Shown in pieces: positions 37,550 through 44,930 of a stretch of 64,000 bases of DNA (positions are counted from its first letter, which is position 1; every line of letters begins with the position of its first letter). The stretch lies in assembly GCF_032062105.1 (NCBI RefSeq), contig NW_026921914.1, positions 1-64,000 of the forward strand. The letters run 5' to 3'. The translations under genes and the position numbers were made by a program. The stretch is from Saccostrea cucullata. Its lineage: Eukaryota. The notes below the pieces were generated by a model that worked only from the letters and a program-made list of their open reading frames with translations, was not told the origin of the DNA and ran no database searches.

Positions 37550-38252
37550 TGTGACAATTCCGGAATTTTAAGGTACGACCATGCAGAGTTCTCAATTAGT
37601 CATCGTTAACATCACGTGACTTTGATAGGGTATATATATCGAGACTCTGCAGTCGTCTGTGTCATTGTTGATGCGCCGGCCAAAGAGAGAAGACGAGTGT
37701 AAGTGTCATATGCATAAAGCATTGTTATTAATTCCTCGCCTGTTAATGCAGTTTAGAGAGTGAATTTGGAAGGCCATTTGAGGTTTGCCAAACCTGCTAT
37801 AAGGCCTGCCACAAACTTGGTTAACCTCAAGCAAAGAGGCTAGCCATAAAGTTCGTCTGCATTCGCTGACCAGTCCGTCCAGGCCGCTATACTCATTGTC
37901 CGTCCTGAATAAGGCATCCTACAGTGAGTGTAGTGGTTGAAGGGCTATCACATATACTGTCCGTCCTGAATAAGGCATCCTACAGTATATGCGGTAGTCC
38001 AAGGGCGACTGGCCTTGCATTTTAGTATTATTATTAATAGGTCTACCAGATAATTTATTGTTGCTTGCCTCTGATTGATTGTATTGATTCACCATTTGAT
38101 TATTGTTAACCTAGATAAGGTTAGGACGTATTTGTATATTTCGGCAGTCCTTTTTAATCATACCAATCAATTTTAAATCAGTTTATGTTTTACACCCCAA
38201 ACCCTGGAAATAACCAGGTACGATCCCATTGATTAATTGTAAATACGTTACA
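37550..38252 (+). repeat. 5' LTR
   Basis: TGTGAC...GTTACA; TATA box 37631-37638, Inr-like TCATT ~37662, GTAAGT donor 37699. Confidence 0.95.
37870..38012 (+). promoter_or_regulatory. Structured RNA element in LTR: three-way junction with two hairpins capped by an identical 21-nt apex (CCGUCCUGAAUAAGGCAUCCU)
   Basis: 17-bp stem 37883-37899/37921-37937 and 19-bp stem 37942-37960/37982-38000 with G-U pairs on the + strand; closing stem 37870-37880/38003-38012. Confidence 0.75.
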
Positions 38253-38258
38253 AAAATT

Positions 38259-38276
38259 TGGTGGCAGCGTCGGGAT
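38259..38276 (+). promoter_or_regulatory. Primer-binding site (tRNA-Leu type)
   Basis: TGGTGGCAGCGTCGGGAT, close to the complement of the 3' end of metazoan tRNA-Leu(AAG/TAG) as I recall it. Confidence 0.8.
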
Positions 38277-38370
38277 TTGGGGTTGCATTAAATCATTAAA
38301 GTTTATTATTATGTAGTTTTTGTCCAGGTTAATTGTAGTTCAGTTAAAGTTTATTTTGCAATTTTTCGAT

Positions 38371-41300
38371 ATGTCTGAGAGTGACATTATGGATGATGAA
38401 ATGACTGCCTTAGAGCAGGAGCTAAGCAAGCTTCAGGCCAGTATAAATAAAGAACGAGCAAAGACGGCCGCCAGAGATTCAGGATTACCTGAAAGTAGGC
38501 GGACTACCATAGATTTAGGTGAGGGTGTAAGACCTAAAACGAATAGGACGACCACCCTACCAAGTATGTATACTAGGCCTGACAACCTTAGCGAAATGAG
38601 AAGAGATGATGGTGGCGAGCCAGATAGGTTTTCCGTTACGAGTACACCATACCATGCTTATACATCCAGGCATGACTTCCCATTGTTGAATGAGGCAAAC
38701 ATTACAACCCGCCGTCCTGAGAATATCACACAGGCTGACAAACGGAAAAACGCCATGGTGAAACCAGATAAATTTGATGGAAGTTCGTCATGGGCTGATT
38801 TTAAGTCTCACTTCGATGTTTGTGCAGAACTAAACGGATGGACTTTGGCTGAGAGGGGGATGTATTTAGCCGTTGCCCTAAGAGGTCAAGCACAGAGTGT
38901 CCTTGGAAATCTGCCGGCTGTAGACAGATGTAACTACAGACTTTTAAGTAAGGCACTTGAAGAGAGATTTTTGCCGTCCAATCAGACTGAATTATATAGG
39001 GCTCAGTTGAGGGAAAGAAGGCAAAAGGCTACAGAGTCATTACCAGAGCTTGGACAGGACATGCGTCGTCTGGCAAACCTGGCCTACCCAACAGCTCCTG
39101 TGGAAGTGAGAGAAACCCTGGCGAAAGAACAGTTCATTGATGCCTTAAGGGAAAGCGACATGCGACTGCGCATTAAACAAGCCCGGCCAGTGGACTTGAA
39201 TGACGCAATCAGGCATGCCGTTGAATTAGATGCATTCAATTCAGCTGAACGACGTTTGACAGAGAGCAAAGGATATTTGAGGGAGATGAAGCCAGAGGAA
39301 AAGACAGACCAAGGAGATACAATTACCTCCCTACTGAAAGCAGTCCAGGATATCAAAAAGGAAATGCAATCTATGAAGATGAGAATGGAGAAGCAAAACT
39401 CTACACAGCCATCCTCTCCTGGTGTGACCTGTCATTACTGCAAAAAGAAAGGCCATGTGAAGAAGAACTGTTTCAAGTATAAAAATGCGATACAAGGCAT
39501 GACAAATGCCAGCAAAAGCCAAAGGCCAGCGCCTTTAAGAAGTGAACATCAGAATGCTAAGCAAAAGGATAGCACAGCCAACAAGACAGGCATTAGTCGA
39601 AAAGCTGGGGAAGCTGGGATTTTTATCGAAGCAGTTATTGATGGCTATAGGGTTAAACTACTTGTAGATACTGGTGCGACCCTCAGTATTATTTCACCAG
39701 ACATACTACATTCTGTTCTTAAGGATCCGCACCCAAGACTTAATGAGGTGAGCAAGCCCATCCTAATGGCTGATTGTACTGCCATGAAAGTGGAAGGGTC
39801 TCTTTCAATTTCTTTTACAATAGCGGACTCAATGTATAGCCAAACATTTGCTGTAGCAGACACTGGTGTTGATGGCATACTTGGGCTTGATTTTATGACG
39901 AACAATGATTGCTTGATTGATTTGACAAACTCTTGTATGATTATTAAGGGCAAGCGTGTAAAACTTGTTTTTGAGGGCAAGATAGGTTGCTGTAGGATAA
40001 CCTTGGCTGGGAATGTCAATGTTCCACCTTACAGTGAAATTATTACCATTGGCAATGTCATACCCCCTGTCTTTGAAAAGGTACCCCAATTTGGTATCGT
40101 AGAGTCGTCTGATCGTTTCTTGGAATCTGATAGAGGTTTAGTGGCCAGAACTTTAGTAGAAGGTAATAAAGTAGCCCCCGTTAGATTGATGAATCCTTCT
40201 GCAGAAACACAAACCTTATATAAAGGAACTTTTGTAGCTACTTTGTCTGACATTGACAACGTCTATGACAAGACCAGTTACTTACAAGACAATAAGAGAA
40301 AATTGCCTGACCATCTTAAGGATTTATACGCAAGGTCAGTTACAGGATTGACAGCAGATAATGCCAAGGCTGTTAAAAACATGCTTTTGAAGTATTCACA
40401 CCTGTTTGCGGCCTCAGATGCTGATTTAGGTCAAACAAAAGTTACCGAGCATACCATTAATACTGGAACAGCCACACCAATTAAACAGCCTCCAAGGCGC
40501 ATGCCCGTTCATATGCAAGAGGAAACGGACCGCCACGTTGATGATATGCTGAAAAGGGAAATAATTGAGGAATGTACAAGTCCATGGTCATCCCCAGTCG
40601 TGCTAGTAAAGAAGAAGGATGGGAGCACAAGGTTTTGCGTCGACTATAGGAAGTTAAATAATGTAACCATTAAAGATGCATACCCACTCCCAAGAATCGA
40701 CGACTCCCTGGATCAGTTATCAGGGAAGAAATATTTTTCAACATTAGATCTTAACGCAGGGTATTGGCAGGTTGAAGTGGCTTCCCAAGACAGAGATAAG
40801 ACAGCGTTTGCAACCAAAAAGGGTCTATACAACTTCAAAGTCATGCCATTTGGGCTTTGCAACGCCCCGGCGACTTTTGAGCGATTAATGGAAACGGTCT
40901 TGAGAGGTCTGCAATGGCAAATTTGCCTTGTATACCTGGATGATATCATTGTAGTCGGCGAAACTGTAGATGATATGATCAAAAATCTAACTCAAGTGTT
41001 CGACCGTTTAGTAGCAGCTGGCCTTAAGTTGAAAGCCAGAAAATGCACATTGTTTGCGTCAGAGGTTGAATATTTGGGACATATTGTGTCTCAAAAGGGG
41101 ATATCAACAAGTCCAACTAAAATAAAGGTTGTGCAAGAATGGGAAGTTCCCTCCAATGTATCAGAGCTCAGGTCATTCCTCGGGTTCTGTAGCTACTACA
41201 GACGTTTTGTAGCAAACTTTGCAACAATAGCTAAGCCACTTCATGACCTAACAAAGAAAGGAGCACATTTTATTTGGAGTGACAAATGCCAGGAAGCATT

Positions 41301-43302: not shown

Positions 43303-43373
43303 TGATACTATGCTTACAGTTCATAACAGATATTATTAACCTGTAATGCATATTTTTTTTTATATGTTTGTAG

Positions 43374-44060
43374 ATGGCAAAGACAAAAGTTACTCCAGGG
43401 AAATGTCGTAAATGCCCCATGTGCACCTACATGGCAAGAACGGAAGAGGACTACAAAAGCCATGTTGTACAGTGCGCTATGAGAACATTTAACTGCACCT
43501 TTTGCAGTTACTCAAGCAATAAGGAGATAAATGTCAAGAGACATGAGAAAAGAGCCCACCTTGGCCTGATTGAGGAGCCCATCAAGCTTGATGGTAGGCC
43601 CGATGAGAGAAGAGAGGCAACTTGTAATGAAAGTGTTGAAAAAGACGAAGAGGAATCAGGGAAAGAGTGGCTTAAGCAAGACTATGGGGACGTTATTGGC
43701 ACTCTGTCTACTGATAGTAGTGATAATGAAGAAGAGGCAAAAGATTCCCCATCACAGAAAGAGGAAAAAGCCATTAACGATAAGCTGTTGGAGGGTAGAG
43801 TCGTAAGGAAACAAACAGCACCCACCAAACCCCACATTCCAAAAACGAAGATTCCTCAATCCACTAGTAAACCAGAAGTTGAAGGTACTCAAGAATCCAA
43901 ATGTGAGAGTTGTAAGAGGAAGAGATTCATGGTGGACATTGGAACCCAGACTGAGGCGGGTGAGAAGACCATCATGAGGTCTACCAAGCGGGTCAAAAGA
44001 TTTCGTGAGGGTGACATTGACATTGAAGAAGTAGTTGAGGAGAAGACTGAACTTCGCTGA
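43374..44060 (+). CDS. Retrotransposon accessory ORF3: two zinc fingers (C2HC + C2H2), acidic linker, basic NLS-like motif, TQT motif
   Basis: CPMC-x12-H-x3-C and CTFC-x12-H-x4-H; KRKR; DIGTQTE; ATG directly preceded by branch point, pyrimidine tract and AG; lies between pol stop and PPT. Confidence 0.85.
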   Translation: MAKTKVTPGKCRKCPMCTYMARTEEDYKSHVVQCAMRTFNCTFCSYSSNKEINVKRHEKRAHLGLIEEPIKLDGRPDERREATCNESVEKDEEESGKEWLKQDYGDVIGTLSTDSSDNEEEAKDSPSQKEEKAINDKLLEGRVVRKQTAPTKPHIPKTKIPQSTSKPEVEGTQESKCESCKRKRFMVDIGTQTEAGEKTIMRSTKRVKRFREGDIDIEEVVEEKTELR

Positions 44061-44227
44061 CTTTTTGGTGCACATAGTTGTACATAGTTGTATATATGTT
44101 TATAGATTACAGAAGAAAGGAATTCTTTGTAAATGACGTTTGTTTATTAAAGATTTCTCTAAATTATACAATTATCAGTTTATTTAAGTTGTACATGCGG
44201 GGCGCATGTCATCGGAGGCATGGGTAG

Positions 44228-44930
44228 TGTGACAATTCCGGAATTTTAAGGTACGACCATGCAGAGTTCTCAATTAGTCATCGTTAACATCACGTGACTT
44301 TGATAGGGTATATATATCGAGACTCTGCAGTCGTCTGTGTCATTGTTGATGCGCCGGCCAAAGAGAGAAGACGAGTGTAAGTGTCATATGCATAAAGCAT
44401 TGTTATTAATTCCTCGCCTGTTAATGCAGTTTAGAGAGTGAATTTGGAAGGCCATTTGAGGTTTGCCAAACCTGCTATAAGGCCTGCCACAAACTTGGTT
44501 AACCTCAAGCAAATAGGCTAGCCATAAAGTTCGTCTGCATTCGCTGACCAGTCCGTCCAGGCCGCTATACTCATTGTCCGTCCTGAATAAGGCATCCTAC
44601 AGTGAGTATAGTGGTTGAAGGGCTATCACAAATACTGTCCGTCCTGAATAAGGCATCCTACAGTATATGCGGTAGTCCAAGGGCGACTGGCCTTGCATTT
44701 TAGTATTATTATTAATAGGTCTACCAGATAATTTATTGTTGCTTGCCTCTGATTGATTGTATTGATTCACCATTTGATTATTGTTAACCTAGATAAGGTT
44801 AGGACGTATTTGTATATTTCGGCAGTCCTTTTTAATCATACCAATCAATTTTAAATCAGTTTATGTTTTACACCCCAAACCCTGGAAATAACCAGGTACG
44901 ATCCCATTGATTAATTGTAAATACGTTACG
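44228..44930 (+). repeat. 3' LTR
   Basis: Near-identical to 5' LTR; ends TTACG instead of TTACA. Confidence 0.95.

What the first reader, a model, noticed from the sequence alone, without database searches (positions are those of the whole stretch)
37550..44930. Candidate complex-retrovirus-like regulatory module in a Gypsy retrotransposon: spliced zinc-finger accessory gene plus structured RNA element in the LTR
Seen: the 5' LTR runs TATA (37631), Inr-like TCATT (~37662), perfect donor GTAAGT (37699), then a multi-hairpin element (37777-38012). After pol, a branch point/pyrimidine tract/AG acceptor sits directly before the ATG of a 228-aa zinc-finger ORF (43374). A divergent Gypsy family 1.5 kb away has the same LTR order on its own sense strand. 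Inference: splicing 37698 to 43374 makes a subgenomic ORF3 mRNA that lacks the 5' hairpins, which are kept only in unspliced genomic RNA. That is the logic of Rev/RRE (export or packaging of unspliced RNA) or, being promoter-proximal, of Tat/TAR. Established: Gypsy third ORFs made from spliced RNA are typically env-like; this one has no signal peptide or TM segment. I do not know of such a module in mollusc elements but cannot search the literature.
Basis: partly seen in the sequence, partly recalled or inferred. Interest (0 to 1): 0.92.

Follow-up and report, generated by a model that had tools for sequence, protein, structure and literature searches.

The report
Oyster Gypsy retrotransposon with zinc-finger gene
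An intact oyster Gypsy-type retrotransposon carries a conserved third gene for a small zinc-finger protein of the DNA-binding kind, probably made from a spliced RNA, and a strongly conserved pair of RNA stem-loops in its LTR, but nothing yet shows that the two work together like Rev/RRE or Tat/TAR.

Summary
Window 37550-44930 is one intact, young Ty3/Gypsy element: 703-nt LTRs with 3 mismatches, an uninterrupted 1643-aa gag-pol, and a 228-aa ORF3.

ORF3 belongs to a family found across bivalves (oysters, pearl oyster, scallops, probably lucinids). It always lies after pol and is under purifying selection (dN/dS 0.17-0.19). It has two CTCF-like C2H2 fingers, an acidic disordered middle and a C-terminal beta-hairpin.

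Comparison supports splicing. A pyrimidine tract plus AG lies 0-10 nt before the ORF3 Met in all 11 loci. A GTAAGT-like donor lies 67-90 nt after the TATA box in 8 of 10 LTRs. No RNA data were available.

The twin stem-loop with the CCUGAAUAAGG apex is real (z -6.6) and is the best-conserved LTR segment.

The Rev/RRE or Tat/TAR reading is not supported:
- The fingers are of the double-stranded-DNA-binding class.
- In 38 of 120 Pol relatives the module is fused to the end of integrase.
- One fused family lacks the motif.
- An ORF3-less non-autonomous neighbour keeps the motif.
- The hairpins lie too far downstream to be TAR-like.

This is a new variant of a known kind: a spliced, non-env ORF3.

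The parts
37550..44930 (+). Complete Ty3/Gypsy LTR retrotransposon (7381 bp), flanked by the 4-bp target duplication CAAT (37546-37549 and 44931-34)
37550..38252 (+). 5' LTR (703 nt), TG...CA ends
37631..37638 (+). TATA box, conserved in all related LTRs. Inr-like TCATT follows at 37662-37666.
37699..37704 (+). Candidate splice donor GTAAGT; exon 1 would end at 37698. It lies 68 nt after TATA.
37771..37860 (+). First, less conserved hairpin block of the leader
37866..38012 (+). Twin stem-loop on a common basal stem. The apical motif CCTGAATAAGG is at 37904-37914 and 37965-37975. This is the best-conserved LTR segment.
38259..38283 (+). Primer-binding site (starts TGG) and adjoining conserved leader
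38371..43302 (+). gag-pol, one uninterrupted ORF of 1643 aa: gag, CCHC knuckle, PR, RT, RNase H, IN
43333..43373 (+). Candidate branch point, T-rich tract and AG acceptor abutting the ORF3 start
43374..44060 (+). ORF3, 228 aa: two C2H2-type fingers (aa 11-61), an acidic disordered middle, a basic motif and a C-terminal beta-hairpin
44214..44227 (+). Polypurine tract
44228..44930 (+). 3' LTR, with the same TATA, GTAAGT (44377) and twin motif (44582, 44643)
34012..36098 (-). Neighbouring non-autonomous LTR element of a related family: two 612-nt LTRs and a gag fragment (ORF 34824-35498), no pol, no ORF3. The twin CCTGAATAAGG motif is kept in both LTRs.

Best explanation
The region is an intact, recently inserted Ty3/Gypsy retrotransposon. 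Its lineage is spread across bivalves and has gained a third gene.

ORF3 encodes a small soluble protein with three parts: two CTCF-like C2H2 zinc fingers, an acidic disordered segment, and a conserved basic motif followed by a C-terminal beta-hairpin.

ORF3 is most likely translated from a singly spliced subgenomic mRNA. The donor would lie about 35 nt after the start site, inside the LTR, and the acceptor abuts the ORF3 Met. This is the expression logic known for env of errantiviruses and retroviruses (inferred from conserved signals, not shown by RNA).

In sister families the same module is the in-frame C-terminal extension of integrase, yet it keeps its own Met and acceptor. For that reason I take the protein to act at the DNA stage. 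It would be a sequence-reading double-stranded-DNA binder working with integrase or the preintegration complex, or on the element's own LTR DNA. I do not take it to be an RNA export or elongation factor (inference).

The twin stem-loop with the invariant CCUGAAUAAGG apex is a cis-acting signal of the genomic RNA leader. It lies downstream of the donor, so it would be intronic in the subgenomic RNA. Most likely it marks the unspliced RNA for packaging or dimerisation by Gag, which has a CCHC knuckle. That is what leader stem-loops downstream of the major donor do in simple retroviruses (inference).

A direct ORF3-hairpin partnership is possible but not indicated.
For: Element anatomy and intactness:
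-.

ORF3 family and position:
- 260 hits at E<=1e-3, with full-length relatives in Ostrea, Saccostrea, Pinctada, Mizuhopecten, Argopecten, Pecten and a lucinid-symbiont bin.
- ORF3 always lies between pol and the 3' LTR.
- dN/dS is 0.17-0.19.
- Conserved motifs run along the whole length.

Splicing signals:
- A strict YAG site with a pyrimidine-rich tract lies within 14 nt of the ORF3 ATG in 8 of 11 loci, against 1-3% of control windows. The other 3 loci are near misses.
- The acceptor is kept inside coding sequence in the Pol-fused families.
- A single GTAAGT-like hexamer lies 67-90 nt after TATA in 8 of 10 LTRs, against 4-11% of 25-nt control windows.
- The donor survives indels between species.

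DNA-binding class:
- The family profile matches CTCF, ZFAT and ZNF64 fingers at E down to 6e-15.
- Foldseek gives only weak hits, none at E<=0.001, and nearly all of those listed are tandem C2H2 zinc fingers, mostly DNA-bound.
- AlphaFold2 models two beta-beta-alpha fingers at pLDDT about 90.

Fusion to Pol:
- 38 of 120 relatives carry the fused module.

Hairpins:
- z -6.6 with strand asymmetry.
- 8 of 11 hairpin units are stable with different stem sequences.
- The segment is 97.3% and 92.5% identical across species, against 52-88% for the rest of the LTR.
- The motif is kept in the ORF3-less non-autonomous neighbour.
- Gag has a CCHC knuckle.
- No Rfam family matches.
Against: - No transcript evidence was available. 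All 20-odd fetched contigs with ORF3 are unspliced DNA.
- By position-weight score alone the donor is unremarkable: 10-30% of random 110-nt windows do as well.
- L024 shows no donor-like hexamer near its TATA.
- Three of 11 hairpin units do not fold better than shuffles. The invariant part could therefore be a DNA site rather than an RNA structure.
- Seven insertions show no shared target motif, so an integration-targeting role has no direct support.
- The contact positions of finger 2 differ between motif-bearing families ((K/R)xNR) and Pol-fused families, including the two checked for the motif (mostly KxY(K/R/Q)). A real ORF3-motif link would predict this.
- The poly(A) site is unknown. The hairpins could lie in R and also sit at the 3' end of every transcript.
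Confidence: 0.55

Rival explanations
1. ORF3 is a trans-acting RNA-binding regulator and the twin hairpin is its response element on unspliced RNA. In the Rev/RRE version the pair serves export or use of intron-containing RNA. In the Tat/TAR version it serves promoter-proximal activation.
For: - The hairpins lie downstream of the donor, so they are intronic in the ORF3 mRNA.
- All 7 families with a separate ORF3 that could be checked carry the motif.
- Finger-2 contact residues are conserved where the motif is conserved, and differ in Pol-fused families, the two of which that could be checked show no motif.
- Some C2H2 fingers bind RNA (general knowledge). A faint zf-C2H2_jaz hit appears in L024.
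Against: - The fingers match the DNA-binding class. No homology to any retroviral regulator was found.
- The module is fused to integrase in many relatives, which would be odd for an export or elongation factor.
- The motif is absent from the complete LTR of ORF3-bearing L024.
- The motif is kept by an element without ORF3.
- A TAR-like element should lie at the very 5' end, upstream of the donor. These hairpins do not.
- The co-distribution rests on few families and is confounded by phylogeny.
Confidence: 0.12
2. A transactivator acting on DNA. ORF3 binds the repeated 11-13-bp motif as double-stranded DNA in the LTR and, through its acidic segment, raises or maintains LTR transcription. This is the logic of the foamy-virus Tas protein, without homology to it.
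For: - The architecture is two DNA-type fingers, an acidic tryptophan-containing segment and basic clusters.
- The motif is invariant in sequence while the flanking stems vary, and 3 of 11 units lack a stable stem.
- There are two copies per LTR.
- Finger contact residues co-vary with motif presence.
Against: - Long stems with different sequences, strand asymmetry and G-U pairs point to selection on RNA structure.
- Fusion to Pol fits a soluble transcription factor poorly.
- The canonical recognition code for (K/R)xNR does not obviously read a triplet of the motif. This is my inference from the textbook code.
- There is no binding evidence.
Confidence: 0.18
3. ORF3 is not expressed by splicing. 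It would be made by reinitiation, by leaky scanning or readthrough from the genomic RNA, or from an internal promoter. The splice-like signals would then be chance or serve something else.
For: - No junction evidence exists.
- In fused families the module can be made as part of Pol without splicing.
- The donor score is individually unremarkable.
Against: - The acceptor is conserved 0-10 nt from the Met in all 11 loci, including inside coding sequence, where it constrains the Pol C-terminus.
- The N-terminus is conserved from the first Met.
- The donor position is conserved.
- In the window, 71 nt and a stop separate pol from ORF3.
Confidence: 0.1
4. The hairpins regulate polyadenylation. The loop holds AAUAAG, the nearest thing to a poly(A) signal in several of these LTRs. 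Folding would hide or present it differently at the two ends of the RNA.
For: - There is no canonical AAUAAA or AUUAAA in the window, L001, L013, L009 or neighbour LTRs, and AAUAAG sits in both loops in four of these five (L009 has no AAUAAG).
- A U-rich stretch follows the second hairpin.
Against: - The Mizuhopecten loops read GAACA and GAGCA, and a second variant reads GAAUAGAG, so the hexamer is not conserved.
- Four families have a poly(A)-signal-like hexamer 14-20 nt after the donor instead.
Confidence: 0.08

Closest known systems
Errantiviruses (Drosophila gypsy and kin): a third ORF expressed from a spliced subgenomic mRNA
   Same: The element is a Ty3/Gypsy LTR element with a third ORF after pol, a donor in the leader and an acceptor just before the ORF. 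[quoted passage not shown]
   Different: ORF3 here is not an envelope protein. It has no signal peptide or membrane segment and instead has two C2H2 fingers. Gag-pol is one ORF without a frameshift. Splicing is inferred, not observed.
Non-env ORF3s of bdelloid rotifer LTR retrotransposons (GDSL esterase, DEDDy exonuclease)
   Same: LTR elements that captured a host-type, non-envelope third ORF. [quoted passage not shown]
   Different: The captured domain differs: zinc fingers rather than enzymes. So does the host phylum. Here the module alternates between a separate ORF and an integrase extension.
C-terminal accessory modules of Ty3/Gypsy integrases, such as the chromodomain of chromoviruses (general knowledge)
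   Same: In 38 of 120 Pol relatives the module is an in-frame extension of the integrase C-terminus. That is the place where chromatin- or DNA-reading modules that guide integration sit.
   Different: There is no homology to chromodomains. In the window element the module is a separate gene. No target-site preference is visible in 7 insertions.
Retroviral leader packaging and dimerisation stem-loops downstream of the major splice donor (general knowledge)
   Same: Paired stem-loops with identical apical loops lie in the 5' leader, downstream of the donor, and so are specific to unspliced RNA. Gag has a CCHC knuckle.
   Different: The stem-loops lie inside the LTR, upstream of the PBS, rather than between PBS and gag. 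No sequence or Rfam relation was found. Function is untested.
Rev/RRE and Tat/TAR of complex retroviruses; Tas of foamy viruses (general knowledge)
   Same: A small accessory protein comes from a spliced RNA, and a structured or repeated element lies in the transcribed LTR region. The element would be intronic, as the RRE is.
   Different: No similarity of ORF3 to any of these came back from Pfam, PDB sequence or fold searches. The hairpins are not at the 5' end as TAR is. The fingers are of the DNA-binding class. The module is fused to Pol in relatives.

Membership tests
Ty3/Gypsy (Metaviridae) LTR retrotransposon | Two LTRs with TG...CA ends, a target duplication, a PBS after the 5' LTR and a PPT before the 3' LTR | tested here: met
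Ty3/Gypsy (Metaviridae) LTR retrotransposon | Domain order gag, PR, RT, RNase H, IN | tested here: met
   Pfam hits in this order on the 1643-aa ORF; CCHC knuckle
Errantivirus-type element (env as third ORF) | The third ORF encodes a membrane glycoprotein with a signal peptide and a transmembrane segment | tested here: not met
   Maximum hydropathy is 0.28 and there is no hydrophobic segment. Two C2H2 fingers are present instead.
Errantivirus-type element (env as third ORF) | The third ORF is expressed from a spliced subgenomic RNA | tested here: inconclusive
   Donor and acceptor signals are conserved. No RNA data were available, and all fetched contigs are unspliced DNA.
Rev/RRE-type export module | A trans-acting protein related to, or built like, known RNA-binding export adaptors | tested here: not met
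   No such hit in Pfam, PDB sequence or fold searches. The best matches are DNA-binding C2H2 fingers.
Rev/RRE-type export module | A structured RNA element confined to intron-containing transcripts | tested here: inconclusive
   The structure is real and downstream of the donor. It lies in the LTR and the poly(A) site is unmapped, so it may also sit at the 3' end of all RNAs.
Rev/RRE-type export module | The protein binds the element, and unspliced RNA depends on it | not testable with these tools
   None
Tat/TAR-type activation module | The response hairpin forms at the extreme 5' end of every transcript, upstream of the major donor | tested here: not met
   The hairpins begin about 110 nt after the presumed start site and lie downstream of the donor at 37699.
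Classical tandem C2H2 zinc fingers (CTCF/ZFAT-like) | Two beta-beta-alpha fingers with Cys2-His2 or Cys2-His-Cys ligands and a short linker | tested here: met
   C14, C17, H30, C34 and C41 are invariant or nearly so. AlphaFold2 gives pLDDT about 90. The profile hits CTCF at E 6e-15.
Integrase C-terminal accessory module | The module is encoded in frame at the end of integrase | tested here: not met
   In the window a stop and 71 nt separate pol from ORF3. The feature is met in 38 of 120 relatives.
Leader packaging/dimerisation signal | Conserved stem-loops in the genomic RNA leader, downstream of the donor, kept by non-autonomous relatives | tested here: met
   Function itself is not testable here.

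The most novel reading that the evidence does not exclude
The zinc-finger protein and the invariant twin motif form a self-encoded regulator and response element of an invertebrate Gypsy lineage. 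ORF3, made from the spliced RNA, would read the CCUGAAUAAGG element as RNA hairpin or as LTR DNA. It would thereby control the transcription, export or fate of the unspliced genomic RNA. This would be a complex-retrovirus-like regulatory layer that arose independently in a retrotransposon.
Probability: 0.15. Interest if true: 0.85.

Novelty: new variant of a known kind. Interest (0 to 1): 0.5.

Why it matters
- LTR retrotransposons with non-envelope third genes are known but few, and none of those I found in the literature carries a zinc-finger DNA-binding module.
- This lineage is spread across commercially important bivalves.
- The same module is either a separate, apparently spliced gene or the tail of integrase. 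That gives a natural comparison for how retroelements gain accessory functions, and possibly for how integration or expression is steered.
- ORF3 copies are annotated as host genes ("RE1-silencing transcription factor-like") in oyster genomes, which misleads gene-family analyses.
- The invariant leader stem-loops are a candidate cis-signal for a whole clade of elements and a handy marker for annotating them.

Tried and rejected
1. My first Pol query started one base late, at 38372, and so was in the wrong frame. The Pol identities I read and the "no other pol in the window" reading were therefore wrong. One search corrects them: gag-pol starts at 38371, identities to relatives are 53-90%, and a gag homologue lies in the neighbouring element.
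2. MAFFT plus RNAalifold on 12 hairpin units from different families recovered only the 3-bp apical stem, because the lower stems are out of register. I used per-unit folding against flank shuffles instead.
3. Rfam gave no family. The only match was mir-144 at 19 bits against a threshold of 60.
4. The one metagenome scan, for the twin motif, returned 67 loci. None had homology to ORF3 or the LTR, and one (L070) gave a single weak pol (integrase-core) match at 29% identity. Many are about 73/146-nt tandem arrays.
5. The search for related loci on prokaryotic genomes failed with alignment A2 because it has no conserved stretch. With P0099 it found nothing.
6. P0235, an abundant Pol family with no ORF called after pol, had no DNA available, so its LTR could not be checked.
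7. P0206 from a pseudoscorpion is a chimeric gene model. It has no ORF3; one relaxed-pattern motif-like hit lies on the minus strand of that locus.
8. I considered a tiny intron inside the LTR, from the donor at 37699 to a conserved pyrimidine tract plus CAG about 50 nt on. I dropped it because the tract is conserved only in the three closest species.
9. The tRNA-Thr gene in the window does not match the PBS.
10. The bacterial promoter/terminator scan is not informative here.
11. I did not scan viral contigs. It is unlikely to hold mollusc elements, and I wanted to stay clear of the bar on fetching animal viruses.

Full report
**What is there.** Window 37550-44930 is one complete LTR retrotransposon on the plus strand.
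- The two LTRs (37550-38252 and 44228-44930) are identical at 699 of 702 compared positions. The insertion is therefore young.
- Relatives have 4-bp target duplications. This sets the window duplication as CAAT.
- A primer-binding site starting TGG follows the 5' LTR, and a polypurine tract precedes the 3' LTR.
- Gag-pol is a single uninterrupted ORF of 1643 aa (38371-43302). Pfam finds gag, protease, RT, RNase H and integrase in Ty3/Gypsy order, and there is a CCHC knuckle.
- After a stop and 71 nt comes ORF3 (43374-44060, 228 aa).

**A correction to my own work.** My first Pol query started one base late and was in the wrong frame. The numbers I drew on Pol were wrong, and one search replaces them.

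**ORF3 is a real, conserved gene family.**
- Word-based and exhaustive protein searches find full-length relatives. They occur in Saccostrea cucullata (99%, presumably the source genome), S. echinata (78%), Ostrea edulis (67%, plus a second family at 45%), Pinctada, Mizuhopecten, Argopecten and Pecten. One more sits in a bin of a lucinid-clam symbiont, presumably host contamination.
- In every locus I could read, ORF3 lies between pol and the 3' LTR of a full or partial Gypsy element.
- Gag-Pol identity to the window ranges from 90% down to 53% in these elements. ORF3 identity ranges from 79% down to 29%.
- Among the three closest species dN/dS is 0.17-0.19.
- Conserved features in the alignment:
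  - the first residues after the Met;
  - a Cys2-His-Cys finger;
  - a Cys2-His2 finger;
  - an acidic stretch with an invariant-like Trp and a QDPGD-like motif;
  - a basic R-K-x-T-x-P motif;
  - a Q-T motif followed by a C-terminal hairpin.
- AlphaFold2 gives two beta-beta-alpha fingers (aa 11-61, pLDDT about 90), a disordered middle and a C-terminal beta-hairpin.
- There is no hydrophobic segment, so ORF3 is not an envelope protein.

**What kind of fingers.**
- Pfam gives only weak C2H2 hits for the window protein and clearer ones for relatives.
- A profile of the family matches the DNA-binding fingers of CTCF, ZNF64 and ZFAT in the PDB, with E down to 6e-15.
- Foldseek gives only weak matches (none at E<=0.001), nearly all of those listed being tandem C2H2 zinc fingers, mostly DNA-bound.
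- No retroviral regulatory protein came back from any search. Tat, Rev, Tax and Tas were the proteins I had in mind.
- Long host poly-zinc-finger proteins of a chiton, an annelid and arthropods hit the finger region only. The fingers look like captured host-type fingers.

**The unexpected finding: fusion to Pol.** Among the 120 best Pol relatives, 38 carry the ORF3 module fused in frame to the C-terminus of Pol, giving proteins of about 1850-1990 aa.
- The module's own Met is kept 4-8 residues after the conserved end of integrase.
- I read the DNA of two such elements. A strong pyrimidine tract plus CAG lies 7 and 10 nt before that Met, inside coding sequence.
- The module is therefore either a separate gene or an integrase extension. 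In both layouts it keeps the signals for separate expression.

**Splicing is supported by comparison, not by RNA.**
- Acceptor. Under a strict rule (YAG, at least 70% pyrimidines over 15 nt, no upstream AG), 8 of 11 loci have an acceptor within 14 nt of the ORF3 ATG, against 1-3% of control windows. The other three have an AG abutting the ATG after a T-rich tract.
- Donor.
  - A single hexamer matching GT plus at least 3 of AAGT lies 67-90 nt after the first TATA in 8 of 10 LTRs. Control 25-nt windows show one in 4-11% of cases.
  - Between Saccostrea and Ostrea the donor survives, while its surroundings are only 52% identical and shifted by indels.
- Two caveats on the donor. By weight-matrix score alone it is unremarkable. 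One fused family (L024) shows none.
- All fetched contigs are unspliced. The longest Logan contig is a permuted internal-plus-LTR assembly, which means genomic DNA.

**The LTR element.**
- The 37770-38015 stretch folds into one hairpin block plus a twin stem-loop on a common stem, at -98.9 kcal/mol and z -6.6. The complementary strand gives z -2.7, so G-U pairs favour the sense RNA.
- Each twin arm has an apical CCU-GAAUA-AGG stem-loop, an internal loop and a long lower stem.
- The same apex recurs in other families, with different lower-stem sequences.
  - It occurs in the second O. edulis family, in Pinctada and in the neighbouring element.
  - In Mizuhopecten the loop reads GAACA or GAGCA.
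  - A variant, CCCGAAUAGAGC, occurs in another S. cucullata family and in Pinctada.
- Eight of 11 units fold far better than flank shuffles (z -2.9 to -5.0). Three do not.
- Among the three closest species the twin hairpin is the best-conserved LTR segment: 97.3% and 92.5% identity, against 52-88% elsewhere. Most changes are one-sided and keep pairing.
- Rfam has no such family.

**Does the hairpin go with ORF3?**

For a link:
- All seven families with a separate ORF3 that I could check have the motif.
- Their finger-2 contact positions read (K/R)xNR.
- Pol-fused families mostly read KxY(K/R/Q).
- The two fused elements I could read show no motif. L024's LTR is complete; L025's is incomplete.

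Against a link:
- That contrast involves few families and two clades, so shared ancestry can explain it.
- L024 has the module but no motif.
- The neighbouring non-autonomous element (34012-36098, minus strand) has lost pol and ORF3 but keeps the twin motif in both LTRs. This is what one expects of a cis signal needed for being copied in trans.
- Hairpins that start more than 100 nt after the start site and downstream of the donor are not TAR-like.
- Whether the hairpins are absent from the spliced RNA depends on the poly(A) site.
  - Most of these LTRs lack a canonical signal.
  - AAUAAG sits in the loops.
  - Four families have a signal-like hexamer 14-20 nt after the donor.
  - I cannot place R.

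**Most likely mechanism.**
- Shown: an intact Gypsy element, a conserved and selected third gene with DNA-type fingers, conserved splice-like signals, a conserved structured leader element, and fusion of the module to integrase in relatives.
- Inferred:
  - ORF3 is made from a singly spliced RNA, as env is in errantiviruses (PMC4276936) and as ORF3s of LTR elements generally are (PMC5408684).
  - It acts on double-stranded DNA together with integration or on LTR DNA.
  - The twin stem-loop marks the unspliced genomic RNA, most simply for packaging or dimerisation by Gag.
- The coupled-module reading keeps a modest probability.

**Literature.** The large survey of mollusc LTR retrotransposons classifies by RT and does not mention a third ORF or zinc fingers (PMC6238403). 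Other searches found no description of this gene. Non-envelope ORF3s are documented in rotifers. I therefore rate this a new variant of a known kind.

Noticed in passing
window 34012-36098 (-): A 2.1-kb non-autonomous LTR element of a related family. It has two 612-nt LTRs and a 224-aa gag fragment (56% identical to the main element's gag over 87 aa), with no pol and no ORF3. I found no clean target duplication.
   Followed up: partly
P0225-P0314 (38 of 120 Pol relatives); L024 6376-7164, L025 4876-5667: The ORF3 module is fused in frame to the C-terminus of Pol in many related families. It keeps its own Met, with a pyrimidine tract plus CAG just upstream inside coding sequence.
   Followed up: yes
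window 37740-37748 and homologous LTR positions in L001, L002: A conserved TAATTCCTCGCCTG...CAG lies about 50 nt after the LTR donor. It looks like an acceptor for a tiny intron, but it is conserved only in the three closest species.
   Followed up: partly
window 37713-37718; L002, L012, L025 LTRs: A poly(A)-signal-like hexamer (CATAAA, ATTAAATAAA, AATAAA, ATTAAA) lies 14-20 nt after the LTR donor in four families and is absent in S. echinata. R may be short and end before the hairpins.
   Followed up: partly
window 47462-47534 (+): A tRNA-Thr(CGT) gene. Its 3' end does not match the element's primer-binding site, so it is not the primer.
   Followed up: yes
window 12984-14701; 26151-27163; 29730-29986 and 53371-53715: Satellite-like tandem arrays: 168 nt x 10, 47/93 nt, and 30 nt. 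A 71/72-nt array is present twice in opposite orientation about 23 kb apart, on either side of the two LTR elements.
   Followed up: no
P0003, P0012, P0014, P0091 and others: NCBI gene models name ORF3 copies "RE1-silencing transcription factor-like" or "uncharacterized protein LOC...". Retrotransposon genes are thus annotated as host genes, at many loci per genome.
   Followed up: partly
L008 (Logan SRR27190613): In a copy whose pol is split into five called ORFs, ORF3 is still intact. Its protein cluster has 54 member sequences.
   Followed up: no
L001 1675-2221 and 9492-9878: The S. echinata copy sits inside an array of about 155-nt tandem repeats that continues on both sides of the element.
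   Followed up: no
L010: One Mizuhopecten copy lies within the span of a SID-1-like gene model, presumably in an intron.
   Followed up: no
L024 603-806; L013 6140-6215; window 37764-37812: A second recurrent leader motif (TTTGG...CTGCCACA, often duplicated) is shared by motif-bearing and motif-less families.
   Followed up: no
L026, L033, L034, L036, L051, L057 and others (metagenome contigs): The 11-nt motif also recurs in unrelated tandem arrays with a period of about 73/146 nt in environmental contigs. These are not related to the element.
   Followed up: partly
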